Part shown: positions 7,592-59,600 of the stretch, in pieces | Layout: each line of letters starts with the position of its first letter | Position numbering within the stretch: the stretch's first letter is position 1 | Assembly (NCBI RefSeq): GCF_902652985.1 | Contig: NC_047019.1 | Coordinates: forward strand, 35,464,001 to 35,528,000 | Direction of reading: 5' to 3' | DNA: 64,000 bases | Origin: Pecten maximus | Lineage: Eukaryota | The notes under the pieces: generated by a model | The model's database searches: none | Told to the model about the DNA's origin: nothing | What the model saw: only the letters and a program-made list of their open reading frames with translations | Program-made: the position numbers and the translations under genes

Positions 7592-10500
7592 CTAGCACTC
7601 CATGGCTAGAGGTGGTGGCGTGGGAAATGCACTGAGAGCTGTGTCTGTACATGGAAATGAGGATAGAGGTATTGTAGTAGCGGTTCCGCTGTCAGGTAAA
7701 CTGTCTGTATCAACACAATTTGTGTCCAAGAACTCGGAGTCTCCATCTCCATACCCACTGTTACTACTGGAGTTACTCTCAGTCTCATCAGTAGACTGAG
7801 AACGGTGGATCTTTGAGCTGGGAGTCTGGACGTCTTTGCGGCAGCTAAGACAGGGCTGTAACAACTGGGGATCCACCAACACTTCCCCATTCAGTCCTTT
7901 GAATATAGTTCCACAACACACCTGAGTTCTGAAAGTAAACCAAAAACATTGATAACAATCCATGTAGAAATCAAAATCCTTTAAGTTTGGTGTTAAGCTT
8001 AAGACATCTAACACCAATAATTCCTCTATGTACTTCTCATAAGAGATTTATCAGGAATCAAGGCCTTTCTTTAATACCCGAATTATAATCAATTAACATT
8101 AGCTTATAGAGTATATATACATCAAGTTATTGGAGGATTATCAGATTTGCTGGCACTTGGTGTTATGTAACTATAACTTTCCAGCCAAAAGTTAAATACT
8201 CCAGGTGAGCCAAACTCAACACTTGAACTTACTTTTTCCAGTAGCTGAGATCTAGGAATGAGCTGATTCTAGGATCACTCTGTTTGCGCTTGTGCTTTGA
8301 TGGTCGATCCATGTGGGCTGTACTTTCATCTATGTCTGAATCGTCACTATCACTCCCTCCAAACACATCCTTGTCACAACTATCTTCATTCACTTCATAG
8401 AGTAAAATCATAAATCATGTTACAGTGTATCAGAAAATTCAAATTTATTTTTTTTTAATTCAAAAATTGTGTAAGGCATGAAACATGAAGTAGGTAGTGC
8501 AAGTTACCACTATATGTATTTAAAATACTTTGTAATAATTGCATGTAAAAACAGTAATAACCTTCATTCGTATACATGTATACATTAATATAAAAATGTC
8601 TGGGTCATTAAATTCCTTAGATGATATGATGATTCATCATGCAGAAGTCTAGATATTTATTTCCTGGTTACTGTGTATATAATCTAGCTCTCTATAAAAT
8701 GCCTTTGTACATAACTACACATGCATACTGTACTGGTGTTTGGACATCTGTTGTTAATTCTATTTCCAAGCCATTTCAATATAGAAACTAGAGACTATGT
8801 ACCTCTATTATACAATTATTCATTTCTGATGTTTCTGTCTTTCCTTCCTAAAAACTATCAGTTTTTATTTCTAGTTACCAGTATTGGTTGTATATGCTAG
8901 GACAAAGAACCCCACCTTCTGACAGAGATGGATATTGGATTAAAAACACTGTACACATGACATTTGACATACCTTATATTTCAAGAATTCAGGTGTATAA
9001 TGTAAACAAAAGAAGACATGAAAAACGGTAATGTGCACAGAAAATTTGTCATTTGTATAACATATACTGGTACACAAACACATGTATAGAGTATGTGATG
9101 TACATTAGGGACACAAGCTTGTGTAGTACAATTATAGTCACAAACTTAAAATTTCCGATAACGTTTTGTGTCAAGTTCATAGGGCAAAACTTCAAATAAT
9201 ATGTAGATTTACAACCATAATGCAAGGGTCATGACAAGGGTGAGATATTTATGAGCACAATAATGATACTGATAATTATTCTTTAACCCTGAAAACAATA
9301 ACTTAAGTACTAAAACTATCCATGGCATAACAACTTTCCATCATGACAGTAATAGTCTAAATAACAACTTCTTTTACACATATTTTACAAATGGACAGTA
9401 TGGTCAGCTAAGGCAGGCAAAGACATGTTAAAATAAATTGGGCCTTGATGAGTCAACATTCCCAGCAAGCCCCAACGCCACCCAGACTGACCTGTGATGA
9501 CCGACCCAGAGCCCATGCCAAGTTTAGAGTGATATGACCTAGGGACAATCTGGTACTGGCCTGCCAGGGCTAATAGAGCAGATAAAATTATATCCCTCAA
9601 CAGATATGGGGCAGGCAGGAACCCCTCTGACATACAGCTGTAGCAATAACCAGGCAACTTATGATGAATGTGTATGCATTGGTGAAAGATGATATTTGGA
9701 GAGATTTTTATCTCTGGAGTTGAATCTATAAACACCATATATGGTAGATACCAATTACAAGCAGGGGGTGTGTATTGAGGAGGAACAAACAGAGCAGCTA
9801 GAAATGTAGAGCAGATGTGGTACTATACAGCATGTTATCAAACCCCGAGAGGTTTACAATTACATTCCTTAGTAGATATGGGGAGCTTGGTACCACCATA
9901 CCTATTGGTAAGGTTCCTAGGATAGACAGGGTATTGGGTTACTCTCCAATGACCCATCTACTAACTGCTCTTAATTAACATTACTAATCACTAAAATCCT
10001 GCACAGCTTGCATCTTTCCCCATATACCAAACCCTATGTACAATTTCAATATGGCCTCCACAGGAATTTTGCCTAGCTCCAGTTTACAAATCTTCTGCAT
10101 CTAATCTAACCTACATCAAAAAATATTGTTTTCATTAGGGACCTATAGATAGAGGATAGCAGGATGTTACATTAAAAGAAGGATGGCATCCAACAGATGA
10201 ATTGCAGGAATTTTATTGTAAACATATAAGTTTTATGTCAATTTTCCTTCAAACGAGATTACCTGATAAATCATCAAAATAGCCCCGGGGACTTGGAATG
10301 GCATAGGACTTTTTGGTTTTCAGTGGAGACTTGTATTTGTTGTTTGTTGGACTTTTGCTTTTTATCTTGAGCGTTGATTTGATTCCTGGTCCAGCCCTAG
10401 CATCAACAACCTGAAAAGGACAAAGTAACGGATGACATCAGATTATATGTAATGCAGGAAGTAGCATATAATAGTTCACAGATATACAGCTAATAAATAA

Positions 10501-49772: not shown

Positions 49773-50070
49773 GTTTGTTTGATACCAGAAAATATTTCTA
49801 AATTTCAAGAATTACTTTTGATATCTAGACTAATATTTTGACAAAAAAATATATGATATCAAGCACCCATTTTTTATACCAGAAAATGCATGCTTAGGTT
49901 TTTCATATCAAGAATTCATTCATTTATAACAAAAATAAATTTTCTGAAACATGTTACATTTATTATTGATAAAAAATAGTGCCGTTTTACTATATTTTTA
50001 TATCAAGAGTTATGTTTTTGATTCTGGTTCAGAATAATGAAATATTCGGCAAGTCAAAATCAAGTGCACC

Positions 50071-50319
50071 TGTTGTGACTCTATGGGGCGAGTTGGTTTG
50101 CGGTGGTCCGAGTCTGTAGGTATATCTGGACAACTCGCCCGAAGGTGATGTGTGGAAGTACTCGTCACTCGTCCAGGTTAGTCTACATATGGTTGTTCTG
50201 GTATACGGACGTGTTTCACACACCGCACCTGACTGACCGTAGGCTCGCCGTATTGCACGGCATTATATATATACTATATCCTAGCAGATATTGCATATTC
50301 ACGGCTATCTTGCACAACA
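50071..50319 (+). repeat. 5' LTR
   Basis: TGTTGTG...CACAACA 7-bp inverted termini; direct repeat of 56322-56570. Confidence 0.97.
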
Positions 50320-50320
50320 T

Positions 50321-50330
50321 TGGTGTCAGA
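50321..50330 (+). other. Primer-binding site, probably tRNA-Leu
   Basis: TGGTGTCAGA 1 nt after the LTR, complementary to the ...TCTGACACCA 3' end of metazoan tRNA-Leu(CAA) as recalled. The match is only about 10 nt. Confidence 0.7.
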
Positions 50331-50651
50331 GTTTAAACGGGTTTATATAGGCAAATTTATTTTCACTGTCGATACAGTCTTACTGTTCAGTGACAGCTGT
50401 TTATAGTGTGTAATAGCCCCGGGCCGTTACTCGGCGCACGGTAATACGGCTATTTTTAGAATTAAAAAAGTGCTTACTGGCCAGTGATATCTACACGTAT
50501 ATCACTCTCTACGGAAATTGTCCATATATTTGGTTTGGAGTTTGTTTTTTGGTAATCATTTGTTCTATATCTCTGCTGTATTATATCGGTACGTCATATA
50601 TTTATATATAGGAATTTTCAGGAGAATTAGGTTGTATTATTCATTGGAGTT

Positions 50652-52121
50652 ATGGATATCAATACGGCTTCGGAGGCAGATCTTGGTACTATCCACCAAA
50701 TTGGAAAAAAACGAGCTAGAGCTATTATAGAGAAAAGGGAGGAGTTGGGGGAACTAACCCTGGCGGATCTCAAGCAGATACAGGGGGTGCCTAGCACAAT
50801 TTGGGATCCCTTGCTCAAGACGGGGGTTATAGTTATCCCATTGGATGAGTCGGAAGGGGTTCCGAGGGAACCTAGCGCGGACATCAAAACCATGAGAGCG
50901 GCTCTAGAGAAGATGGAAAATGTTATCGATCAGCAAAAGCGGGAAATGGGGGAGGCTAGAGAGGAATTTCGGAGGCAACTCCAAGACGCCGAGATCGATT
51001 ATAAGAATCGTGTGGAAAACCAATGTAGGCGTTATGAAGCCATGTTGGCAGAGGAAGAGAAGAAGCGAGAGGTGAAGCTACAGGCAGATATCCTTAATAA
51101 AATTGAAGAGGTGGCTCCCAGTAATCAGTATGGTGGGCCGACTCACAGATCAGCTGGGAATGAGGAGGCGACACAAGGCAGCAGGAATAGCCATTCCAGT
51201 GTAAGGCCGGACGGAAAGGATGTGGAAAAAAGCCTGAGGGTGAAGGTGCCGCCCTATGACGGGAAGAGCGAATGGAAACCGTATTTGATCCAGTTTCAGC
51301 ATATCGCGAATCGACATAGGTGGTCAGAGGCACAGAAATTGGACAAGATGGTTGAATGCCTTAGGGAGAAAGCTCTGAAGTTTTTTAGCTCCCGGCCCCT
51401 GTCTGTACAAAATAATTTTGCCCTTTTATGTTTGAAGATGAACAGTAGATTTGGCAAAACCGATCTTCCGCACATTGTGCGCAGGCAGTTACAGGATATC
51501 CGACAGTCCACAGAGGAGTCGCTTGAGGAGTATGCTGAGAGGGCCCAGGTACTGGCTTCGGAGGGTTACGCTGACTTTTCCGAAGAAGGAATTGAGACTC
51601 TAGCAATAGATGCCTTCCTGAAGGGTGTTCAGGATAAACATGCTGCATTTTCCGCAATAGAAAAGAATCCTCGATCATTGGATGAAGCAGTCAAGTATGT
51701 CCGGAGCGCAATGACGAACCAGAAGATTATTTTTGGTAGCAAATCCAGGACAGAAATCAAAAGAGTTTCTTTTGATGAGGAGAACATCAACCACGAGTTG
51801 TTGGCTAGGGTCGTTCACAACGTTGATAGGTCACAGTCACGTCTAGGGTTGGGACTGGAGGAGCGTATGCGGCGGACTGAGTGTGACATCCATGATATAA
51901 AGGAGGAGCTCCGGAAGTTGGGTATTCCTGGGAATACAGGTAGAGGTCAGTCTGTCCAGGGTTCACCATCGAAGAGGCTCTCGGTGTGTTTCTTTTGTAA
52001 TAAAGAGGGCCATTTTGTCAAGGATTGTCCTGTGAAGGCCTCCTGTGTTGCTGATAGATCTCGCTCCCCTTCCCCATCAGCTGCCAGGAAGAATTTAAAC
52101 TTCAAAGGGTCGCAGATGTAG
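50652..52121 (+). CDS. gag: Gag (489 aa): N-terminal ComEA-like HhH domain, coiled coil, capsid domain, CCHC zinc knuckle
   Basis: MDINTASEADLGTIHQIGKKRARAIIEKREELG...DLKQIQGV; capsid-type PPYDGKSEWKPYLIQF and IRQSTEESLEEYAER; CFFCNKEGHFVKDC knuckle. Confidence 0.93.
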   Translation: MDINTASEADLGTIHQIGKKRARAIIEKREELGELTLADLKQIQGVPSTIWDPLLKTGVIVIPLDESEGVPREPSADIKTMRAALEKMENVIDQQKREMGEAREEFRRQLQDAEIDYKNRVENQCRRYEAMLAEEEKKREVKLQADILNKIEEVAPSNQYGGPTHRSAGNEEATQGSRNSHSSVRPDGKDVEKSLRVKVPPYDGKSEWKPYLIQFQHIANRHRWSEAQKLDKMVECLREKALKFFSSRPLSVQNNFALLCLKMNSRFGKTDLPHIVRRQLQDIRQSTEESLEEYAERAQVLASEGYADFSEEGIETLAIDAFLKGVQDKHAAFSAIEKNPRSLDEAVKYVRSAMTNQKIIFGSKSRTEIKRVSFDEENINHELLARVVHNVDRSQSRLGLGLEERMRRTECDIHDIKEELRKLGIPGNTGRGQSVQGSPSKRLSVCFFCNKEGHFVKDCPVKASCVADRSRSPSPSAARKNLNFKGSQM

Positions 52122-52137
52122 GCCGATCAGCGACCCT
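52094..52137 (+). promoter_or_regulatory. Programmed -1 ribosomal frameshift signal (T TTA AAC plus stem-loop)
   Basis: Heptamer 52094-52100 is in the correct gag phase, followed by a 5-nt spacer and stem AGGGTCGC (52106-52113) / GCGACCCT (52130-52137). The -1 frame is stop-free from the heptamer into pol. Confidence 0.85.
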
Positions 52138-52165
52138 CCCTGATGACAATAGCAGGCCATCTCCT

Positions 52166-55100
52166 TTGGCGTCACATCAGCCAGTTGTGAGACAAGTAGG
52201 GGTGAAGGACCGGGATGTTGAGAATATAGAGGTCGCGTATAGGGGATTAATGATAGAGGGCGGTCCTAGGACTATGATACTGAATGTCGTGGTTGGGCTT
52301 CGCGTCATACCCGCTGTAGTAGACACTGCAGCTCAGGCCTCTATAATTAATCGGAGCATATTTAAGCAGTTGCTGCCCGACAAACAATCTGTCGGCCGAT
52401 ATGGTCTAAAGGGTGTAGGGCAACAGTCTCTTCTTGAAGCTCAACGGGCGTCCGATGTGCATATGAGCATTGGGGATTCAAACTTTAAAATTGATCTCCT
52501 GGTAGCTAATATAGCTGATGAGCTTATCTTAGGAATAGATTTCCTAGAACGACATCGAGCAGTCATAGACTTCTCAAACTATTCAGTCATGTTGAATGGC
52601 TACCGGTTTCAGGCGGAGTGCATGCTTAATAATGGGAAGGAGCCTGTGAAAGTGTACAGATTGGTCGTTGGGAAGAGAGCAGTTGTCCCACCAGACTCAG
52701 TGAAGTTTATTGTGGTAAGGACGACAGGGCGAGAATCGCCGGAAGGGGATATCTTAGTCCAGCCTTATCAGGAATTGGAAGGCCTGCTCATTCCTCGCGT
52801 ACTTCATCGTGGTTCCTCAGTCATGACTGTTGTCGTGTGTAATCTGTCGGATAAGTTCATCACCCTCAAGGCGGGACTTCCTTTTGGGACGGGGATGCAG
52901 TCCGAGGTTACGCCCGAGGTTACCACCGAGGAAGACACGGCGGAAAGAGGACAGTTTAGTGTCAGACACACAAAGATGGATCGGTACGGCAACCCAGACG
53001 ATGGATTACGAGCGCTGGTCGAGGAGCTGCCGGAATATTTGCAGGACCTTTTCTTTCGTTCTACTGCCAACCTACCAGCCGGCCAGTCAATACGGGTCGC
53101 TGAACTGTTGATCCGCTTCAAGGGCGTGTTCGCCAAAGATGACCTGGACTTGGGGCTTTTCAATGGGGGTATTAAGCACCGCATAGACACGGGAGACTCT
53201 AGACCGGTTAGACAGAAGATGAGACGTACTCCGTTGGGGTTCGAGGAGGAGGAGGAGGACCACATTCACAAGATGTTGGAGAAGGGGGTGATCCAGATGT
53301 CCACATCGGAATGGGCTGCCCCGCCTGTTTTGGTCCGGAAGAAGGATGGCAGTCTCAGATACTGTATAGACTACCGGCTTCTTAACAAGGCAACTGTCAA
53401 GGACGCTTTTCCTCTTCCTGCCATCGGAGCCTGTATAGATACCATCGCAGGAAGTATGTTCATGAGCACTCTAGATATGGCAGCCGGGTATTGGCAAGTC
53501 GAAGTGGCCGAACGAGATCGTCATAAGACAGCTTTTATTACGAAACACGGGTTGTTTGAACATGTGCGGTTGCCATTTGGCTTATGTAACAGCCCAGCGA
53601 CCTTCAACAGAGTTATAGAACTAGTGCTTCGTGGACTGACTTGGAGGGATTGTTTGGCGTACTTGGATGATGTCATGGTCCTTGGGAATGATTTTGACTC
53701 TCATATTCGCAACCTAGGTGAAGTACTGACGAGGTTCCAGAAGTACAACCTCAAGTTAAAACCAAAGAAATGTCACCTTTTCCAGACAGAGGTCAAGTTC
53801 CTTGGGAAGATCGTGAGCGCAAGCGGTGTATCAGTTAATCCTGAGAGTACAGAGGCTGTCCGTAACTGGAAGGTTCCGGTGAATAAGCGTGACGTAGAGT
53901 CCTTCCTGGGATATGTGAACTACCATCGCGAACATATTCCAGGATTTGCTCAGCTAGCGATACCTCTCCATGACCTTACGGGTAAAGCTGATTTCTGCTG
54001 GGTCGAGCGGCATCAACAGGCATTTGAGGACTTGAAGAATGCTCTCATCAATGCCGTGGTATTGGCCTATCCGAATCCAAAGGACCCCTTCATCCTGGAT
54101 ACTGATGCCTCCGACGGAGCAATTGGTGCTGAGCTGAGTCAGGTCCAGGATGGAAGAGAGAAGACCATCTGCTTTGCTAGTAGAGCTTTAACACCAGCGC
54201 AAAAGAGATATTGTACCACACGGAAGGAACTGTTGGCTATAGTTTCCTTTACACGGCAGTTCAGACATTATCTTCTCGGAAAAACGTTTGTGGTCAGGAC
54301 AGACCATAATAGTTTGAGATGGTTGTTAAATTTCCGGAACGTTCAGGGTCAGCTAGCAAGATGGTTAGAGGAACTCTCTTCATACAATATGGTTATTCAG
54401 CATCGGGCGGGTGCGGACCATGTCAATGCGGACGTGCTCTCACGATTGTCCGATCCCCTCGAAAGCTGTTCTAGCTATCAATGTGGGGTTCCATTATCCG
54501 CGTTGCCTTGTGGAGGCTGTGCATTCTGCACCCGAGCTCGTAACCAGTGGGAGGTGTTTGAGGAGGAGGTTGATTATGTGGTTCCGCTAACTGTTAGGCG
54601 GGTGTCGTCGCCTGACACCGAAGTCAGCTCCTTGATATATCCGACATGGACGGATCACCTCTCAGAGGAGGAGCTGCGAGCTAGACAGTTGGAAGACCCA
54701 GACTTGCGACTTGTCATTGGGTGGTTGGAGAACGAGGAGAGTCCATCAGAGGTCGATCTCAGGGTCGCGGGTAAAGAAGTCCGACATTGGTGGAATTGTC
54801 GAGATCAATGGTGCAAGCGGGGTCAAGTCTGGTTTTATCGCTGGGAGGACCCTATTACTCCGAGACTGTTACTTCTTCTTCCTAGGTCCTTACGGCTTCT
54901 GGCCCTTCAGAAGTCTCATGATCTGCCCAACTCGGGACACCTAGGGGAAACAAAGACCCTTCAACGTGTTAAACAGAGTGTTATCTGGTACGGGATGTCT
55001 GGTGACGGCAAGAAGTACGTATCGTCTTGCAGGGTCTGCGGACTCAACAAGAAAGCAAGTATCAAACCCAAAGCTGCCCTCGGACAATACCATTCTGGGA

Positions 55101-56206
55101 ACCCAATGGAGAGGGTTCACATGGACATTTTGGGGCCTCTTCCCGTTACCCCACGAGGGAACAAGTACATCCTCATGGTGATTGACCAATTTTCAAAGTG
55201 GTTAGAATGCTACCCATTGCCGGACCAGAGCGCAGAAAGTGTCGCACGGGCTGTGGTGGATGAATTCATCTCCAGATTCGGCTGTCCACTGGAAATCCAC
55301 ACGGATCAAGGCAGAAATATGGATGGGTCTCTTGTAAGGACAGTTTGCAAATTGCTTCAGATCACAAAGACGAGAACAACTCCATACCATCCAGCTTCCA
55401 ATGGTCAGATCGAAAGGTATAACCGGACTATTCTACAGTCACTCCGATGTTTTATCGACGGGAAACAAGGTAGTTGGGATCAACATCTACAGCAGCTTGC
55501 AGGGGCCATAAGAGCAACTGTGCACCGGCAAACCGGGTTCACTCCTAATCGGATGATGTTGGGTAGGGAGGTAACCCAGCCTCTTGACATCTATCTGGGC
55601 ACATCTAATGTTAAGTCTCAGGTAGAGAGTCCCGCTGAGTATGTGCTCGGTTTGGAGGAAGTGTTAGAGGAAGTCCATCGGATTGCACGCCAGAATCTTG
55701 GCGGCGCGCAGCACAGGCAGAAGAGGGATTATGATCTCCGAGTTCACCAAAGAGCCTACCAGGTGGGGGATGTAGTTCTGAAGGTGGATTCTTCTACGAC
55801 AGTTGGGGTATCGAAGAAGCTGAAGGCTCCTTGGAAGGGGCCCTATTTGGTGACCACGGTAAAATCGCCTGTGTTGTACACCATCACCGACCGGAAGGGC
55901 AGTAGTGTTATCCATCACGATCGCCTAAAACTTTGTAAGGACAGAGAGTTTCCGGTCTGGCTGAGGAGAATGAGGAACGAACTCCTCAAGGAGCTGGAAG
56001 TGGAGTCGTCGGCTGATTCCCGGGAGCGTGAACATGAGGGTGATATGGGACTACGGAAGTTGTTTTCTGGTCCTGGTTCCACGGCAGGGGCAGGAGAACC
56101 CGATGAGAACGGTCAGGTAACACAGAACTCTCCGACCCCGCGGAGTTCCCGCCGGAGGAGGTCCCCTAGGTATCTGCAGGATTACGACCTGTCATTCGGG
56201 AAGTGA
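52166..56206 (+). CDS. pol: Pol polyprotein (protease, reverse transcriptase, RNase H, integrase); probably entered by -1 frameshift at about 52100 rather than at the TTG
   Basis: VVDTAAQASII and ILGIDFL (protease); RYCIDYRLLN, LPFGLCNSPATF and YLDD (RT); TDASDGAIGAEL and TRKELLA (RNase H); H-x6-H...CRVC, HMDILGP, HTDQGRN, SNGQIER and GPY motif (integrase). Confidence 0.97.
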   Translation: MASHQPVVRQVGVKDRDVENIEVAYRGLMIEGGPRTMILNVVVGLRVIPAVVDTAAQASIINRSIFKQLLPDKQSVGRYGLKGVGQQSLLEAQRASDVHMSIGDSNFKIDLLVANIADELILGIDFLERHRAVIDFSNYSVMLNGYRFQAECMLNNGKEPVKVYRLVVGKRAVVPPDSVKFIVVRTTGRESPEGDILVQPYQELEGLLIPRVLHRGSSVMTVVVCNLSDKFITLKAGLPFGTGMQSEVTPEVTTEEDTAERGQFSVRHTKMDRYGNPDDGLRALVEELPEYLQDLFFRSTANLPAGQSIRVAELLIRFKGVFAKDDLDLGLFNGGIKHRIDTGDSRPVRQKMRRTPLGFEEEEEDHIHKMLEKGVIQMSTSEWAAPPVLVRKKDGSLRYCIDYRLLNKATVKDAFPLPAIGACIDTIAGSMFMSTLDMAAGYWQVEVAERDRHKTAFITKHGLFEHVRLPFGLCNSPATFNRVIELVLRGLTWRDCLAYLDDVMVLGNDFDSHIRNLGEVLTRFQKYNLKLKPKKCHLFQTEVKFLGKIVSASGVSVNPESTEAVRNWKVPVNKRDVESFLGYVNYHREHIPGFAQLAIPLHDLTGKADFCWVERHQQAFEDLKNALINAVVLAYPNPKDPFILDTDASDGAIGAELSQVQDGREKTICFASRALTPAQKRYCTTRKELLAIVSFTRQFRHYLLGKTFVVRTDHNSLRWLLNFRNVQGQLARWLEELSSYNMVIQHRAGADHVNADVLSRLSDPLESCSSYQCGVPLSALPCGGCAFCTRARNQWEVFEEEVDYVVPLTVRRVSSPDTEVSSLIYPTWTDHLSEEELRARQLEDPDLRLVIGWLENEESPSEVDLRVAGKEVRHWWNCRDQWCKRGQVWFYRWEDPITPRLLLLLPRSLRLLALQKSHDLPNSGHLGETKTLQRVKQSVIWYGMSGDGKKYVSSCRVCGLNKKASIKPKAALGQYHSGNPMERVHMDILGPLPVTPRGNKYILMVIDQFSKWLECYPLPDQSAESVARAVVDEFISRFGCPLEIHTDQGRNMDGSLVRTVCKLLQITKTRTTPYHPASNGQIERYNRTILQSLRCFIDGKQGSWDQHLQQLAGAIRATVHRQTGFTPNRMMLGREVTQPLDIYLGTSNVKSQVESPAEYVLGLEEVLEEVHRIARQNLGGAQHRQKRDYDLRVHQRAYQVGDVVLKVDSSTTVGVSKKLKAPWKGPYLVTTVKSPVLYTITDRKGSSVIHHDRLKLCKDREFPVWLRRMRNELLKELEVESSADSREREHEGDMGLRKLFSGPGSTAGAGEPDENGQVTQNSPTPRSSRRRRSPRYLQDYDLSFGK

Positions 56207-56307
56207 TGGGCTTTGTCGTATGAATCTGGATAGGACATGCGAGTTGCTCAGCAACTGTCGAGGACATGGAACTTGGTCTTTGTTCCAGCGACTAGTCGAC
56301 ATTTTAT

Positions 56308-56321
56308 AAAATGGGGAGGAG
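56308..56321 (+). other. Polypurine tract
   Basis: AAAATGGGGAGGAG abutting the 3' LTR. Confidence 0.85.
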
Positions 56322-56570
56322 TGTTGTGACTCTATGGGGCGAGTTGGTTTGCGGTGGTCCGAGTCTGTAGGTATATCTGGACAACTCGCCCGAAGGTGAT
56401 GTGTGGAAGTACTCGTCACTCGTCCAGGTTAGTCTACATATGGTTGTTCTGGTATACGGACGTGTTTCACACACCGCACCTGACTGACCGTAGGCTCGCC
56501 GTATTGCACGGCATTATATATATACTATATCCTAGCAGATATTGCATATTCACGGCTATCTTGCACAACA
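56322..56570 (+). repeat. 3' LTR
   Basis: Identical to 50071-50319 on manual comparison; followed by TSD GCACC. Confidence 0.97.
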
Positions 56571-56646
56571 GCACCCACTGTAAGAATGAAACTTCCCATT
56601 GATCGAGACTGTAAGCGTTTGTGCGACGAAGACTGAAATAGAAAAA

Positions 56647-59600
56647 ATGGCGGACGAAGACGGAGATAAGTATGCACAGTCTATTTTTCACGCTTTACCA
56701 ACACCGTATATTCTTTTAAGTAAAATATATCGATTAGTATTTGAAGAGTTCAATTTACGTTATGATTCGAAACAAAGTATGTTTCAGTTTATGGCCGACG
56801 TTCCGGTTTTTTCATCCTTATTATTTATTGCACAACGAGCCATGCTGCACGCGTGCTTGTAAATAAAATGTAGACCATTCGTTATTCGACGACGTTTATT
56901 TACATTCGTACCCGGTACTTAAACGGGTCCCTGAAGCCATCTTTCAATTAAGGTATAACTATGTTATTACGATGAAAAAGGTTATTAACTTAAATATGAA
57001 TAGTAATCTGAACATGATCAGGTCGGGGAAACCCCTAGATCGGCGTATAATACCTCGATCGGCCTATTATACGCCGATTGAGGTATGGATTTGTTACTAG
57101 AAATAGCTCAAATCAATTTAAACTCATCTTTTTAAAAATTTCTATCCAAGTCGCATGAATTTATGACAAAATAAATAATATTTTGCTGAAATATGTTTAA
57201 TGGAAGCAGTGGCTACTTAGAAACTTGATGTTACAATCGCCGCCGTAGTAACACTACCATCGTAACATAGGCCATATAGACCGGAAGTATTACATCTGTT
57301 TTCAGTTCTTTCCCGCACTCAAATAAATTTAATTTTTGTATTTGTATAACGTTTAATGCCTAAATAAATGCGACTTGGATAGAAATTTTTAAAAAAGATG
57401 AGTTTAAATTGATTTGAGCTATTTTTAGTAACAAATCCATACCTCAATCGGCGTATAATAGGCCGATCGAGGTATTATACGCCGATCTAGGGGTTTCCCC
57501 GACCTGATGATGATCAGCGTTATACGGTAACGTTAAGTAGGTACTGTATACTAATATAGGTTTAGCTTTATACGATCACAATGTTTAAACCACTTGATTT
57601 GTTTGCAGTTTTGATGACGATTTAGATGAAGTAGAAGATGAAGAGCCACTTGATGAACCTATTAGTCAGGTAATTAATAATTATGTAACATATTTTTACA
57701 ATCTACTAATTAAAATATATAGATGCTCATTCTCACTACGTTATATGAACATCTAACGACATCGCATAAGGGGTCACGTTCTGGTGAGTGGTGACCTTTG
57801 TTACCTCAATATTTCTCTTTCAGGTCGAATTGACAAATTTTTGATGTCATCAATCTCACCCACTTATCACATCATGCATCTGAAGTAGCCCTGAGTTTCC
57901 TCTGGTGTAGGGCCAGAGCGCACTACTATATGAAAACGTGGAATTATCCGACACCGTATGGTGCCGCTAAGAATTTTGTGCAAATACAATAAAATTGGGT
58001 TTGACATAACACCTACCTTACATATATGGATAACTGAGATATTTATTTACCCCAGAACACCCATTAGTCCCTATCTTGCATTATTCCAGCCGTATATACC
58101 CTATACCTAGCTTTACGCTAGTCAAAATTTCATACTTGACTCAGCGCCATATTGCTAACTATGTAGGTCACAGGCGGACTAATTACCCCAATCAGACAGT
58201 GCAAGGTGGAGCGAAAAGAAAAGAAATACTACATTTATTTTTTTATATATTTTACCGCTTATAATTTATAAAATTATAAAAAAAAATAATGAATTTTTAA
58301 ATTGAATATAACAGGTTTTGGTAAATAATAAGCTTAGTTTTCTTGATTTAAACTATGTAAAAAGAAAAACACATTAAATGATACATGAACTTTTCGGTCC
58401 ATTGCATTCCAATTCGGGTGGTTAGTGGTACTGTCACTTACAAAATTGAGGGTCAACAGTATGAAATTTTGAGTAGCGTAAAGCGAGGGTTCTATACGGA
58501 TGTACGGGTGTTCAAGGGATAAATAAATATCTCATTTATCCATATATGTAAGGTAGGTGTTATGTCACACTCGATTTTATTGTATTTGCACCAAATTCTT
58601 AGCGACGCCAAACAGTGTTGGATAATTCCACATTTTCATATAGTAGTGCGCTCTGGCCCTACACCAGACATGGTGTCGGGGCCAGAGGAAACTCGGGCTA
58701 GCATCTGAAGCTAACCATTTCGGTTATGCACTTTAGTCATGCTATTTTCACTTTCAAGATTCTGTAAGTAGTAATTTGATTGGGGTAATCCAAAAGGTCA
58801 CCCTGACATGAGTCACATGACCCATTATCCAATGTTTTTAGATGTTCATGTAACACAGTGAGAATGACCATCTAGATTTTAATTAGATTGCATATTTTTA
58901 CATAATTATATGATATTTATCAAAATCATCTAGCAGGAAATCCATGCTACATGTATATCCATGTATATTGTATATAACTTAGCAACACAAATGATGAAGG
59001 AAGACAACTTTTTGACTCGTGCCCTGACCGGGCCTCAAACTCACGATCTACGGCACCCAATCGTCTAGCCAGAAATACCCGCAGCCTATACCGCTGCGCC
59101 ACATCAGCGTTCTTAAAAAAAGAACGTTTCAATGGCGCAGAGATGGTTGGCCCGATACCCTGACATGATCATTGTGGAAGTTGTCTATAAGATGATATGA
59201 ATACCTGGATCGCCATGTATTTACATACATGGATACGAATTGTACATATATTATATATATTTCTCTCGGTACAACTACGACAGGAAATTCAAATCTTTAT
59301 CTTCGGATCACCAACACAAAGTGTATATGATACATTGTGCTAATAAATAGATACCCACGATCTACGGCACCATGTATATTGTATATATATATATATACAA
59401 TGATAGTATTGTTCAATACGCGGGATGGATGACTTCTCTGACCAGTCCAAATTGGTAAAGAGTCTATGAGCAAGAGTTTCCAAATTCCTCTGGCCCTGAC
59501 ACCATTTCTGGTGTAGGCCAGAGCAAAGCCAAGACTAAATGGGTGTGGTGGGGTAAATAAATATCTCTTTATCTTTATGTATAAGGTAGGTGTTATGTCA

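What the first reader, a model, noticed from the sequence alone, without database searches (positions are those of the whole stretch)
50652..50825. Gypsy Gag fused to an N-terminal ComEA/EEPD1-like helix-hairpin-helix DNA-binding domain
Seen: Gag starts MDINTASEADLGTIHQIGKKRARAIIEKREELGELTLADLKQIQGVPSTIW, followed by a coiled coil, the capsid domain and the CCHC knuckle in one ORF. Established: this follows the (HhH)2 pattern of the bacterial competence DNA receptor ComEA (ININTAs.eeL..lpGIG...A.aIi.yRe..G.f....dL..v.Gig), also present in metazoan EEPD1. These domains bind dsDNA without sequence specificity. Standard Ty3/Gypsy Gag has only capsid and nucleocapsid domains. Inference: a captured dsDNA-binding module displayed in hundreds of copies at the matrix position of the particle. 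It could tether particles to naked (promoter) DNA, coat or protect the cDNA, or package DNA. Since the element looks active and landed in a core promoter, this is a candidate Gag-based targeting or DNA-handling system. I do not know of a characterised example but cannot exclude prior database annotation.
Basis: partly seen in the sequence, partly recalled or inferred. Interest (0 to 1): 0.88.

Follow-up and report, generated by a model that had tools for sequence, protein, structure and literature searches.

The report
Gypsy retrotransposon Gag with ComEA-type DNA-binding head
An intact, recently inserted Gypsy-type jumping gene makes a capsid protein whose first 62 residues are a real ComEA-like helix-hairpin-helix DNA-binding fold; a whole lineage of invertebrate elements shares this head, which probably lets particles hold on to DNA or chromatin, though that is not yet tested.

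Summary
Window 50652-52121 is one 489-aa gag ORF inside a complete 6.5-kb Ty3/Gypsy element. The element has identical 249-bp LTRs, a 5-bp target duplication, a -1 slippery site and an intact pol. Gag residues 2-46 pass Pfam HHH_3 (33.1 bits against a cut-off of 27). The AlphaFold model is a four-helix ComEA-type fold whose best PDB match is Geobacillus ComEA (TM 0.75, 1.8 A, 33% identity).

The head is not a one-off. About 30 homologous Gags carry it at the same N-terminal position, from Mytilus, Saccostrea, Procambarus and unnamed contigs. It is as conserved as the capsid domain (52-63% identity), while the helical spacer behind it is only 12-21% identical. The residue essential for ComEA DNA binding is basic in 22 of 24 members. 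The second hairpin, however, is remodelled (Pro replaces Gly, with a conserved WDPL motif), and the net charge is about zero.

Capsid topology puts the head on the outside of the particle. The best reading is therefore an avidity-driven, sequence-independent DNA or chromatin tether, functionally like MLV p12. The bacterial versus host origin of the domain is unresolved. The promoter-targeting claim is untestable from a single insertion. Databases auto-label some members "comEA", but I found no paper describing the fusion. Separately, several relatives carry a conserved TatD-nuclease ORF3.

The parts
50066..50070 (+). Target-site duplication, left copy (GCACC)
   Evidence: Read directly from the sequence; identical to 56571-56575
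50071..50319 (+). 5' LTR, 249 bp, TGT...ACA termini
   Evidence: 100% identical to the 3' LTR
50321..50338 (+). Primer-binding-site-like sequence starting TGG, one base after the LTR
   Evidence: Read directly from the sequence; the priming tRNA was not identified
50652..52121 (+). gag ORF, 489 aa, TAG stop
50652..50837 (+). N-terminal ComEA-type double helix-hairpin-helix module (aa 1-62). HhH1 has hairpin Q-I-G followed by K20 and R21. HhH2 is remodelled to G-V-P-S-T-I-W-D-P-L
   Evidence: Pfam HHH_3 33.1/37.7 bits. PDB sequence and profile hits to EEPD1, ComEA and KIF22. Four-helix model with ComEA 8dss_B as top hit, TM 0.75. Residue conservation
50871..51113 (+). Single long alpha-helix (aa 74-154). 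Coiled-coil heptads in aa 74-108, E/K/R-rich after that. Length and sequence vary between relatives
   Evidence: AF2 pLDDT about 90; heptad count; 12-21% identity between lineages; HhH-to-CA distance ranges from about 90 to 300 aa
51126..51236 (+). Predicted disordered linker (aa 159-195) between the helix and the capsid domain
   Evidence: pLDDT below 50
51237..51737 (+). Two-lobed capsid (CA) domain, aa 196-362
   Evidence: Pfam Retrotrans_gag and PNMA. Foldseek matches to PNMA2, Arc, dArc1, Copia and Ty3 capsids
51984..52031 (+). CCHC zinc knuckle (nucleocapsid), aa 445-460
   Evidence: Pfam zf-CCHC 25 bits against a cut-off of 20.8. C446, C449, H454 and C459 are invariant in the family
52094..52100 (+). 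-1 frameshift slippery heptamer T TTA AAC, in the correct phase of the gag frame
   Evidence: the pol frame is open from 52058 and overlaps gag
52058..56206 (+). pol frame, in the order protease, reverse transcriptase, RNase H, integrase (H2C2 zinc domain, rve core, p58-type C-terminal domain). No chromodomain
   Evidence: Pfam RVT_1 107 bits, RT_RNaseH 117, rve 58, Integrase_H2C2 56, Integrase_p58_C 27.3
56308..56321 (+). Polypurine tract abutting the 3' LTR
   Evidence: Read directly from the sequence
56322..56570 (+). 3' LTR
56571..56575 (+). Target-site duplication, right copy (GCACC)

Best explanation
SHOWN. A complete, apparently active Ty3/Gypsy LTR retrotransposon (window 50071-56570) encodes a Gag with this order: a ComEA-type double HhH module (aa 1-62), an 81-residue helix, a roughly 40-residue disordered linker, a two-lobed capsid domain and a CCHC nucleocapsid knuckle. 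The HhH head is inherited within a lineage of invertebrate Gypsy elements. It is held under constraint comparable to that on the capsid domain.

INFERRED. In Ty3-type shells the CA N-terminal lobe and the residues before it face outward. The head is therefore displayed on a stalk on the outside of the particle, in up to hundreds of copies. Through HhH1 (the hairpin, the conserved Arg at the ComEA K63/K164 position, and a basic neighbour) it contacts the phosphate backbone of double-stranded DNA without sequence preference. Each head probably binds weakly. Multimerisation through the helix and the capsid lattice would supply avidity, much as the oligomerisation domain does for Gram-positive ComEA.

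The most likely role is to tether Gag, particles or capsid-containing pre-integration complexes to chromosomal DNA. One example would be mitotic chromosomes after nuclear-envelope breakdown. That is the job done by MLV p12 and the foamy-virus Gag chromatin-binding sequence through nucleosomes, and by the same type of HhH module for the chromokinesin KIF22. Domain identity, position and constraint: about 0.95. The tether mechanism: about 0.45.
For: Element integrity:
- Identical LTRs, a 5-bp target duplication, PBS-like sequence and polypurine tract.
- Slippery site in the correct phase and an open pol frame with all enzymatic domains.

Domain identity:
- HHH_3 above the gathering score.
- Family profile against PDB: ComEA 44.1 and 40.3 bits, EEPD1 32.6 + 27.2, KIF22 27.7.
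- Four-helix model without a connector helix. Best structural match is ComEA 8dss_B (TM 0.75, rmsd 1.8 A, 33% identity), then Tex, KIF22 and Thermus ComEA-related protein. ComEA is described as exactly this atypical connector-less HhH pair (PMC9747964).

Conservation:
- 30 of 47 homologues carry the head at aa ~5-70. Six N-termini taken from genomic loci all match HHH_3.
- The head is 52-63% identical between lineages, against 53-66% for CA and 12-21% for the spacer. dN is 0.38-0.45 for the head, 0.24-0.38 for CA and 1.0-1.35 for the spacer.

DNA-contact residues:
- The position equivalent to V. cholerae K63 / B. subtilis K164, which is required for DNA binding (PMC3879209; PMC9747964), is Arg or Lys in 22/24.
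- The K62 equivalent is basic in 17/24, the hairpin Gly is kept in 19/24 and the R71 equivalent is invariant.

Topology and precedent:
- In Ty3 the CA-NTD forms the protruding outer capsomers and the N-terminal residues run outward; there are 540 CA copies per T=9 particle (PMC6525542).
- MLV p12, a Gag segment N-terminal to CA, tethers CA-containing pre-integration complexes to mitotic chromatin, and heterologous chromatin-binding sequences can replace its C-terminal domain (PMC6021111).
- Pol has no chromodomain or other recognised targeting module.
Against: - No binding data exist.
- HhH2 has lost its second hairpin glycine (Pro in 20/24). It also lacks the basic residues equivalent to Geobacillus K195 and K201.
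- The net charge of the head is -3 to +4, and -1 in the window copy.
- The window copy has Gln rather than Gly at the first hairpin position.
- The window element's nearest relatives (P0020, P0033) appear to lack the head while keeping gag and pol. The head may therefore be dispensable, or those copies may be defective.
- External display is inferred from Ty3, not shown for this element. A protease cleavage could release the head.
Confidence: 0.5

Rival explanations
1. The head has been repurposed as a protein-protein module. It would drive Gag oligomerisation or dock a host factor, with the HhH fold serving only as a scaffold, as in the ERCC1-XPF (HhH)2 dimerisation domains.
For: HhH2 is remodelled into a family-specific, strongly conserved I-P-[NS]-T-x-W-D-P-L...G-x-I motif: W in 22/24, D in 20/24, P in 18-20/24. 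The net charge is near zero. XPF/ERCC1-type HhH domains appear among the weaker structural and profile hits.
Against: The residues that ComEA mutagenesis ties specifically to DNA binding are the ones best kept in HhH1. The Trp aligns with a hydrophobic core position of ComEA (Phe in the alignment), so part of the motif may simply be structural.
Confidence: 0.2
2. The head handles the element's own nucleic acid. It could bind the double-stranded cDNA as the shell opens, or hold Gag in the nucleus near transcription sites to capture genomic RNA.
For: HhH modules bind duplex backbones of any sequence (PMC9747964). Some HhH modules sit in RNA-associated proteins such as Tex. Nuclear trafficking of Gag is common in retroelements (abstract of PMC6042332).
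Against: The CCHC nucleocapsid already sits on the inner side with the genome. The segment N-terminal to CA is on the outer face in Ty3, so it cannot reach packaged cDNA unless the shell opens or the head is cleaved off.
Confidence: 0.2
3. The head is one half of an older DNA-handling toolkit. It was acquired together with, or to work with, the TatD-family nuclease ORF3 found in relatives, and it is a leftover in the window element, which lacks ORF3.
For: A TatD_DNase ORF3 lies inside the LTRs of L006 and L008 and is also present in L001 and L004. The ORF3 proteins of distant lineages align over their whole length with the metal-binding motifs kept. These are all HhH-Gag elements.
Against: In the window element the head is intact with the key residues kept, and the element inserted recently without ORF3. 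No physical or functional link between Gag and ORF3 is known.
Confidence: 0.07
4. The fusion is an artefact or a neutral passenger: a chance motif, a chimeric ORF or a mis-called start.
For: Many database gene models of this family are truncated or oddly named, for example 'myosin-11-like' and 'DNA ligase 1-like'.
Against: There is one continuous ORF between identical LTRs. The same architecture occurs in independent loci with pol downstream. Conservation equals that of the capsid domain.
Confidence: 0.03

Closest known systems
Bacterial competence protein ComEA, DNA-binding domain (Pfam HHH_3; PDB 8dss, 8dfk, 2duy)
   Same: Same connector-less four-helix double-HhH fold (TM 0.75, 33% identity). 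It gives the highest per-domain profile score (44 bits). It shares the I-N-x-N-T-A cap, the G-I-G hairpin, the essential basic residue before the conserved Ala, and the conserved Arg. Gram-positive ComEA also pairs the domain with an oligomerisation module through a flexible linker.
   Different: The Gag head has no signal peptide or membrane anchor, is not periplasmic and has no competence role. It is N-terminal rather than C-terminal. Its second hairpin is remodelled (Pro for Gly, WDPL motif) and lacks the ComEA lysines. It sits in a eukaryotic retroelement.
Metazoan EEPD1 (PDB 9yi2) and the chromokinesin KIF22/Kid C-terminal domain (PDB 2edu)
   Same: Eukaryotic proteins with the same HHH_3-type module. 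EEPD1 is the best whole-protein PDB sequence hit (E 6.3e-6 for the single sequence, 2.3e-16 for the profile). KIF22 is the third-ranked structural hit. From general knowledge, KIF22 uses its module to hold on to chromosome arms.
   Different: EEPD1 has two tandem modules plus a nuclease domain, and KIF22 has a kinesin motor. Their per-domain scores (32.6, 27.2 and 27.7 bits) are lower than ComEA's. No capsid or retroelement context.
MLV p12 and the prototype foamy virus Gag chromatin-binding sequence
   Same: Both are Gag-borne tethers that attach capsid-containing complexes to host chromatin. p12 lies N-terminal to CA, as the head does here (PMC6021111).
   Different: They are short, unstructured peptides that bind nucleosomes. 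There is no sequence or fold relationship, and they do not contact DNA directly through a folded domain. This is a functional analogy only, and it is inferred.
Canonical Ty3/Gypsy Gag (Ty3 Gag3) and its domesticated relatives Arc, dArc1 and PNMA2
   Same: Two-lobed CA fold (Foldseek hits 8rb3, 7r24, 6s7y, 6tap, 6r24), a CCHC knuckle and gag-pol linked by a -1 frameshift.
   Different: These have no folded DNA-binding head. Ty3 has only about 36 N-terminal residues before CA. Mammalian Arc has an unrelated N-terminal helical domain.
Chromoviruses (Gypsy elements with an integrase chromodomain)
   Same: Gypsy elements that carry an added chromatin or DNA-directed module.
   Different: In chromoviruses the module is a histone-mark reader at the C-terminus of integrase. 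In the window element Pol has no such domain, and the added module sits on Gag and is of a DNA-backbone-binding type.

Membership tests
Ty3/Gypsy (Metaviridae) LTR retrotransposon | Paired LTRs with TG...CA-type ends, a target-site duplication, a PBS and a polypurine tract | tested here: met
   249-bp LTRs 100% identical, TGT...ACA ends, 5-bp duplication GCACC, TGG-start PBS-like site, purine tract
Ty3/Gypsy (Metaviridae) LTR retrotransposon | pol domain order protease, RT, RNase H, integrase | tested here: met
   Pfam hits in that order along the 1346-aa ORF
Ty3/Gypsy (Metaviridae) LTR retrotransposon | Gag with a retroviral-type two-lobed capsid fold and a zinc knuckle | tested here: met
   Retrotrans_gag and zf-CCHC; Foldseek matches to PNMA2, Arc, dArc1 and Ty3 capsids
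Pfam HHH_3 / ComEA-type double HhH domain | Profile score at or above the curated gathering threshold | tested here: met
   33.1 bits in the whole Gag and 37.7 bits alone, against a cut-off of 27. Relatives score 33-44 bits; two divergent ones score 23.6 and 25.7
Pfam HHH_3 / ComEA-type double HhH domain | Two HhH motifs packed as four helices without a connector helix | tested here: met
   AF2 helices at 8-12, 18-32, 37-42 and 48-57; superposes on ComEA 8dss_B at 1.8 A. This is a predicted model, not an experimental structure
Pfam HHH_3 / ComEA-type double HhH domain | Glycine-containing hairpin (G-h-G) in both HhH motifs | tested here: not met
   HhH1 is Q-I-G in the window and G/N/D-I-G in the family, with the second Gly kept in 19/24. 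In HhH2 the second Gly is replaced by Pro in 20/24. So one hairpin is canonical and one is degenerate
Pfam HHH_3 / ComEA-type double HhH domain | Basic residue at the DNA-contact position (V. cholerae K63 / B. subtilis K164) | tested here: met
   R21 in the window; Arg or Lys in 22/24 family members. Residue role taken from PMC3879209 and PMC9747964
Pfam HHH_3 / ComEA-type double HhH domain | Sequence-independent dsDNA binding | not testable with these tools
   Needs EMSA, fluorescence anisotropy or similar on recombinant protein
ComEA competence receptor (the protein family, not just its domain) | Secreted or membrane-anchored periplasmic protein of a bacterial DNA-uptake system | tested here: not met
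   The domain is the N-terminus of a eukaryotic retroelement Gag with no signal or transmembrane segment before it. Database labels 'comEA [Mytilus ...]' are domain-driven misnomers
EEPD1 | Two tandem HhH pairs followed by an endonuclease/exonuclease/phosphatase domain | tested here: not met
   Only one HhH pair and no EEP domain. EEPD1 matches through each of its two modules separately
Retroviral Gag chromatin tethers (MLV p12, PFV CBS) | Nucleosome-binding peptide motif in Gag that is required for chromatin association of the incoming complex | not tested
   No sequence similarity was sought or expected. The resemblance is positional and functional only
Chromovirus | Chromodomain at the integrase C-terminus | tested here: not met
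   No chromodomain hit in Pol at E <= 1

The most novel reading that the evidence does not exclude
An invertebrate Gypsy lineage carries a two-part DNA-handling toolkit that no described retroelement has. One part is a folded, ComEA-derived DNA-binding head displayed on the capsid exterior. It tethers or targets particles directly to DNA, a capsid-level targeting principle distinct from integrase-borne readers. The other part, ancestrally, is a TatD-family nuclease ORF3. On this reading the head was originally acquired by horizontal transfer from a bacterial or giant-virus ComEA-like gene.
Probability: 0.15. Interest if true: 0.8.

Novelty: new variant of a known kind. Interest (0 to 1): 0.6.

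Why it matters
How LTR retrotransposons without an integrase chromodomain reach and choose chromosomal DNA is largely unknown outside yeast. A folded, sequence-independent DNA-binding domain on the outside of the capsid would be a simple and experimentally tractable answer. It would be a direct-DNA counterpart of the p12 and CBS nucleosome tethers of retroviruses.

It would also be a clear case of a retroelement Gag acquiring a ComEA-type module that is best known from bacterial DNA uptake. The family is abundant in mussels and oysters, whose genomes are rich in active Gypsy elements. Natural lineages with the head, without the head, with ORF3 and without ORF3 already exist for comparison.

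On the practical side, genome annotations currently mislabel these Gags as 'comEA', 'myosin-11-like', 'interaptin-like' or 'DNA ligase 1-like'.

Tried and rejected
- A word-index search restricted to residues 1-65 found nothing. This is a sensitivity limit of the tool, not a biological result.
- The exhaustive profile search with the head alone returned 35,426 hits. Its top 150 were swamped by prokaryotic multi-repeat 'competence protein ComEA' entries, whose repeats add up in score. It could neither rank candidate donors nor list further HhH-Gags.
- A second alignment-based homologue search added only three more Mytilus polyprotein models and no new phyla.
- dN/dS failed at both ends. The three close copies (L007, L008, L009) differ at too few sites, and distant pairs are saturated at synonymous sites. 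I therefore report relative dN and identity by region instead of omega.
- The careful maximum-likelihood tree did not finish, so the quick tree was used. The deep placement of the three divergent HhH+ Gags is on long branches and is not trusted. Single versus multiple gain is left open.
- I did not build a donor phylogeny of the head against named EEPD1, KIF22 and ComEA sequences. No tool gave me those sequences by reference, and I did not type them.
- Literature searches for HhH, HHH_3 or ComEA together with Gag or retrotransposon found nothing relevant. One search was polluted by the author name 'Comeau'. The Cer1 CERV 'helix-hairpin-helix' is a leucine-zipper hairpin, not this domain.
- Rejected: the reading that the head coats packaged cDNA (topology), and the promoter-targeting reading (a single insertion next to an unannotated flank).
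Full report
THE OBSERVATION. The ORF listing shows one uninterrupted 489-aa frame at window 50652-52121 (+). Pfam finds HHH_3 at residues 2-46 with 33.1 bits (curated cut-off 27, E 5.9e-8), or 37.7 bits when the first 70 residues are scored alone. It also finds Retrotrans_gag at 234-327 and a CCHC zinc knuckle at 445-460.

THE ELEMENT AROUND IT.
- The gag ORF lies inside a complete 6,500-bp LTR retrotransposon at 50071-56570.
- The two 249-bp LTRs are 100% identical and end TGT...ACA.
- They are flanked by a 5-bp duplication, GCACC, at 50066-50070 and 56571-56575.
- A TGG-initiated primer-binding-like site follows the 5' LTR, and a purine tract abuts the 3' LTR.
- gag ends with TAG at 52119-52121.
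- The pol frame is open from 52058 in the -1 frame. The classical slippery heptamer T TTA AAC sits at 52094-52100 in the correct phase.
- Pol (1346 aa from the first listed start) has protease, reverse transcriptase, RNase H, the integrase zinc domain, the integrase core and a Ty3 p58-type C-terminal domain, in Gypsy order. It has no chromodomain.
- There is only one copy in the window, and the window has no N.

WHAT THE HEAD IS. A sequence search of the first 70 residues against the PDB finds EEPD1 (E 6.3e-6, through each of its two HhH pairs), the KIF22 C-terminal domain and B. subtilis ComEA. A profile built from seven heads taken by reference from genomic loci (alignment A1) raises these scores:
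- ComEA: 44.1 and 40.3 bits per domain.
- EEPD1: 32.6 + 27.2 bits.
- Thermus ComEA-related protein: 32.1 bits.
- KIF22: 27.7 bits.

AlphaFold2 with 24 family members gives pLDDT 85-91 for residues 1-62. The domain-only model (pLDDT 81, pTM 0.63) has four helices at 8-12, 18-32, 37-42 and 48-57. Its best PDB match is Geobacillus ComEA 8dss_B (TM 0.75, rmsd 1.8 A over 64 columns, 33% identity). Tex, KIF22, PolC and Thermus ComEA-related protein follow. Foldseek E-values are modest because the domain is tiny, but every top hit is an HhH module. ComEA's DNA-binding domain has been described as an atypical HhH pair joined by a loop rather than a connector helix (PMC9747964), and that is what the model shows. 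Against predicted viral structures, only giant-virus ComEA-like proteins match (TM 0.72-0.73). No retroviral or retroelement protein matches.

THE REST OF GAG.
- After the head comes a single 81-residue helix (aa 74-154, pLDDT about 90). The heptad pattern is clear in aa 74-108, where a/d positions are 75-88% hydrophobic. Further on the helix is rich in E/K/R/Q/D (53%).
- A disordered stretch follows (aa 159-195).
- Then comes a two-lobed capsid domain (aa 196-362), which matches PNMA2, Arc, dArc1, Copia and Ty3 capsid structures.
- A further helix (aa 400-422) and the zinc knuckle complete the protein.

IS IT CONSERVED IN RELATIVES? Yes.
- The homologue search returned 47 Gags, and most have precomputed Pfam HHH_3 + gag + zf-CCHC. 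The named ones come from Mytilus edulis, M. coruscus, Saccostrea echinata and the crayfish Procambarus clarkii. Their automatic names include 'comEA', 'myosin-11-like' and 'DNA ligase 1-like'.
- Thirty of the 47 have the head at residues ~5-70. Most of the others start inside the helix or the capsid domain.
- Genomic loci confirm gag followed by a Gypsy pol in L001, L004, L005, L006, L007, L008 and L009. The six N-termini tested (L001-L006) all match HHH_3, four of them above the threshold.
- Between divergent lineages the head is 52-63% identical, the capsid domain 53-66%, the C-terminal part 38-49% and the helix plus linker only 12-21%. dN follows the same ranking: 0.38-0.45, 0.24-0.38 and 1.0-1.35 for head, capsid and spacer. 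Synonymous sites are saturated, so I give no omega.
- The distance from head to capsid domain varies from about 90 to 300 residues. That fits a spacer or stalk role for the helix.

TREE OF THE CAPSID REGION. This is a quick IQ-TREE run, because the careful search did not finish. All 25 clear HhH-Gags fall in one clade with SH-aLRT 98. Most rows without a head inside that clade are identical or nearly identical to a head-bearing row, so they are truncated gene models.

There is one exception, and it matters. The window's Gag groups (support 95) with P0020 and P0033, which lack the head. The P0020 contig starts 112 nt before its ATG, with stops in the gag frame and nothing HhH-like in any frame. 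This is probably a real loss in a sister lineage. It could also be a defective copy.

Three divergent head-bearing Gags (P0041, P0043, P0046) sit outside the core clade on long branches, among Gags without a head. One gain with losses versus several gains is therefore not resolved. P0041 and, partly, P0043 share the family-specific tail motif (W...G-x-I). That argues for common descent of their heads with the core clade's.

RESIDUE-LEVEL TEST OF DNA BINDING. Mutagenesis shows that V. cholerae ComEA needs K63 (and K62) next to the HhH1 hairpin for DNA binding in vivo and in vitro. G60 substitutions by bulky residues also abolish function, and R71 matters too (PMC3879209). The equivalent B. subtilis K164 / Geobacillus K166 is the best-conserved residue in ComEA and is required for binding (PMC9747964). 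By the HMMER alignments these positions map onto Gag as follows:
- G60 to G18: Gly in 19/24.
- K62 to K20: basic in 17/24.
- K63 to R21: Arg or Lys in 22/24.
- R71 to R29: invariant in 24/24.

HhH1 therefore keeps the known DNA-contact apparatus. HhH2 does not. The second hairpin glycine is Pro in 20/24. The positions of Geobacillus K195 and K201 are Thr and a hydrophobic residue. The segment is a conserved I-P-[NS]-T-x-W-D-P-L motif. The net charge of the head is -3 to +4, and -1 in the window copy. A single head is thus likely to be a weak DNA binder at best.

HOW IT MOST LIKELY WORKS. In the Ty3 capsid the CA N-terminal lobe forms the protruding outer capsomers. The C-terminal lobe forms the inner layer, and NC and the genome lie beneath. 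The residues before CA run outward over the surface. A T=9 particle has 540 CA copies (PMC6525542).

By inference, the head and its stalk project from the outside of this element's particles in many copies. Avidity from the lattice, and perhaps from helix-mediated oligomers, would turn weak, sequence-independent backbone contacts into stable attachment to DNA. Gram-positive ComEA uses the same logic: an oligomerisation domain, a flexible linker and an HhH domain give cooperative binding.

The most plausible use is to tether Gag, particles or capsid-containing pre-integration complexes to chromosomes. MLV p12 is also a Gag segment N-terminal to CA. It does this through nucleosomes, and heterologous chromatin-binding sequences can substitute for its C-terminal domain (PMC6021111). 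From general knowledge, KIF22 uses the same type of module to hold chromosome arms. I put this mechanism at about 0.45. The structural and evolutionary statements are near certain.

RIVALS.
- A protein-protein or host-factor docking role, favoured by the remodelled HhH2 and the neutral charge.
- Handling of the element's own cDNA or RNA, disfavoured by topology.
- A partnership with the TatD ORF3 of relatives.
- An artefact, which is effectively excluded.

WHAT IS NOT SUPPORTED.
- Origin of the domain. Per-domain scores and the structural ranking lean towards bacterial-type ComEA over EEPD1 and KIF22. The domain is only 60 residues long, the exhaustive search was uninformative, and I could not build a named-donor phylogeny. 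Origin is open.
- The 'core promoter' claim. The insertion lies about 76 bp upstream of an ATG that opens a 71-codon ORF with no family match. There is no annotation or transcript evidence, and one insertion cannot show a preference.

NOVELTY. This is an ordinary Gypsy element with an unusual accessory domain, conserved across a lineage, on Gag. Databases already tag the domain automatically. Six literature searches found no description of an HhH or ComEA-type domain in any retroelement Gag, within the limits of the open-access library searched. I rate it a new variant of a known kind, of moderate-to-good interest because the hypothesis is cheap to test.

SIDE FINDING. Four relatives carry a third ORF after pol that encodes a full-length TatD-family nuclease domain (135-173 bits) behind a 210-290-aa N-terminal extension.
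- In L006 and L008 this ORF lies inside the LTR pair.
- The ORF3 proteins of the deep-branching L006 and the core-clade L008 align over their whole length (25% identity, E 4e-34), with the H-x-H and E-T-D-A-P-Y motifs kept. The ORF is therefore old in this lineage.
- The window element has lost it or never had it: only 115 bp separate the pol stop from the 3' LTR.
- I found no literature on this either.

SAFEGUARDS. Copies were only compared. Nothing in the window looked human, and there are no N stretches.

Noticed in passing
L001:5975-7453; L004:2-1438; L006:13362-15050; L008:6630-8102: Relatives of the window element encode a third ORF after pol with a full-length TatD_DNase domain (135-173 bits) behind a 210-290-aa extension of unknown fold. 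In L006 and L008 it lies inside the LTR pair. The L006 and L008 proteins align end to end (25% identity, E 4e-34) with the metal-binding motifs kept. A nuclease ORF3 in a Gypsy lineage appears to be undescribed. The window element has no ORF3.
   Followed up: partly
L006:11932-13218: The integrase part of this relative's pol carries a zf-CW domain (a histone-tail reader type) next to rve, according to the precomputed Pfam hits. So some members of the lineage have a chromatin-reading module on integrase in addition to the HhH head on Gag.
   Followed up: no
L010:1-1255 (protein P0020) and protein P0033: The window Gag's nearest relatives lack the HhH head and most of the helix but keep gag and pol. 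The 112 nt upstream of the P0020 start hold stops and nothing HhH-like. This is a natural head-less lineage that would be useful as a comparison.
   Followed up: partly
L002:7001-8575 (Procambarus clarkii) and L003:7001-8785 (Saccostrea echinata): These HhH-gag genes have no intact pol ORF of 200 aa or more downstream within 7 kb. They are either decayed copies or candidates for domesticated Gag genes. The crayfish head lacks the basic DNA-contact residues and the WDPL motif.
   Followed up: no
window 7592-8014 (-): An ORF with a significant match to the C-terminal end of FAM60A/SINHCAF (37.1 bits against a cut-off of 27). It is probably an exon of a metazoan host gene, which fits an animal genome.
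   Followed up: no
window 56647-56862 (+): A short ATG-initiated ORF (starting MADEDGDK) begins about 76 bp downstream of the element's 3' end. It has no Pfam match, so whether it is a first exon is unknown.
   Followed up: partly
window 57034-57078 and 57453-57491: Short 19-bp repeats occur about 400 bp apart and look reverse-complementary to each other. The flanking sequence also reads as an inverted pair (compare 57100-57170 with 57340-57400). This suggests a small inverted-repeat (MITE-like) element just downstream of the Gypsy insertion.
   Followed up: no
L007 (ENA ERZ940687, hydrothermal vent metagenome); L004 and L008 (JGI 3300006079 and 3300006078): Several near-identical copies of one HhH-Gag subfamily come from 'metagenome' assemblies. 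They are presumably host DNA of an invertebrate sampled together with its symbionts, so eukaryotic retroelements are being filed among microbial metagenome proteins.
   Followed up: no
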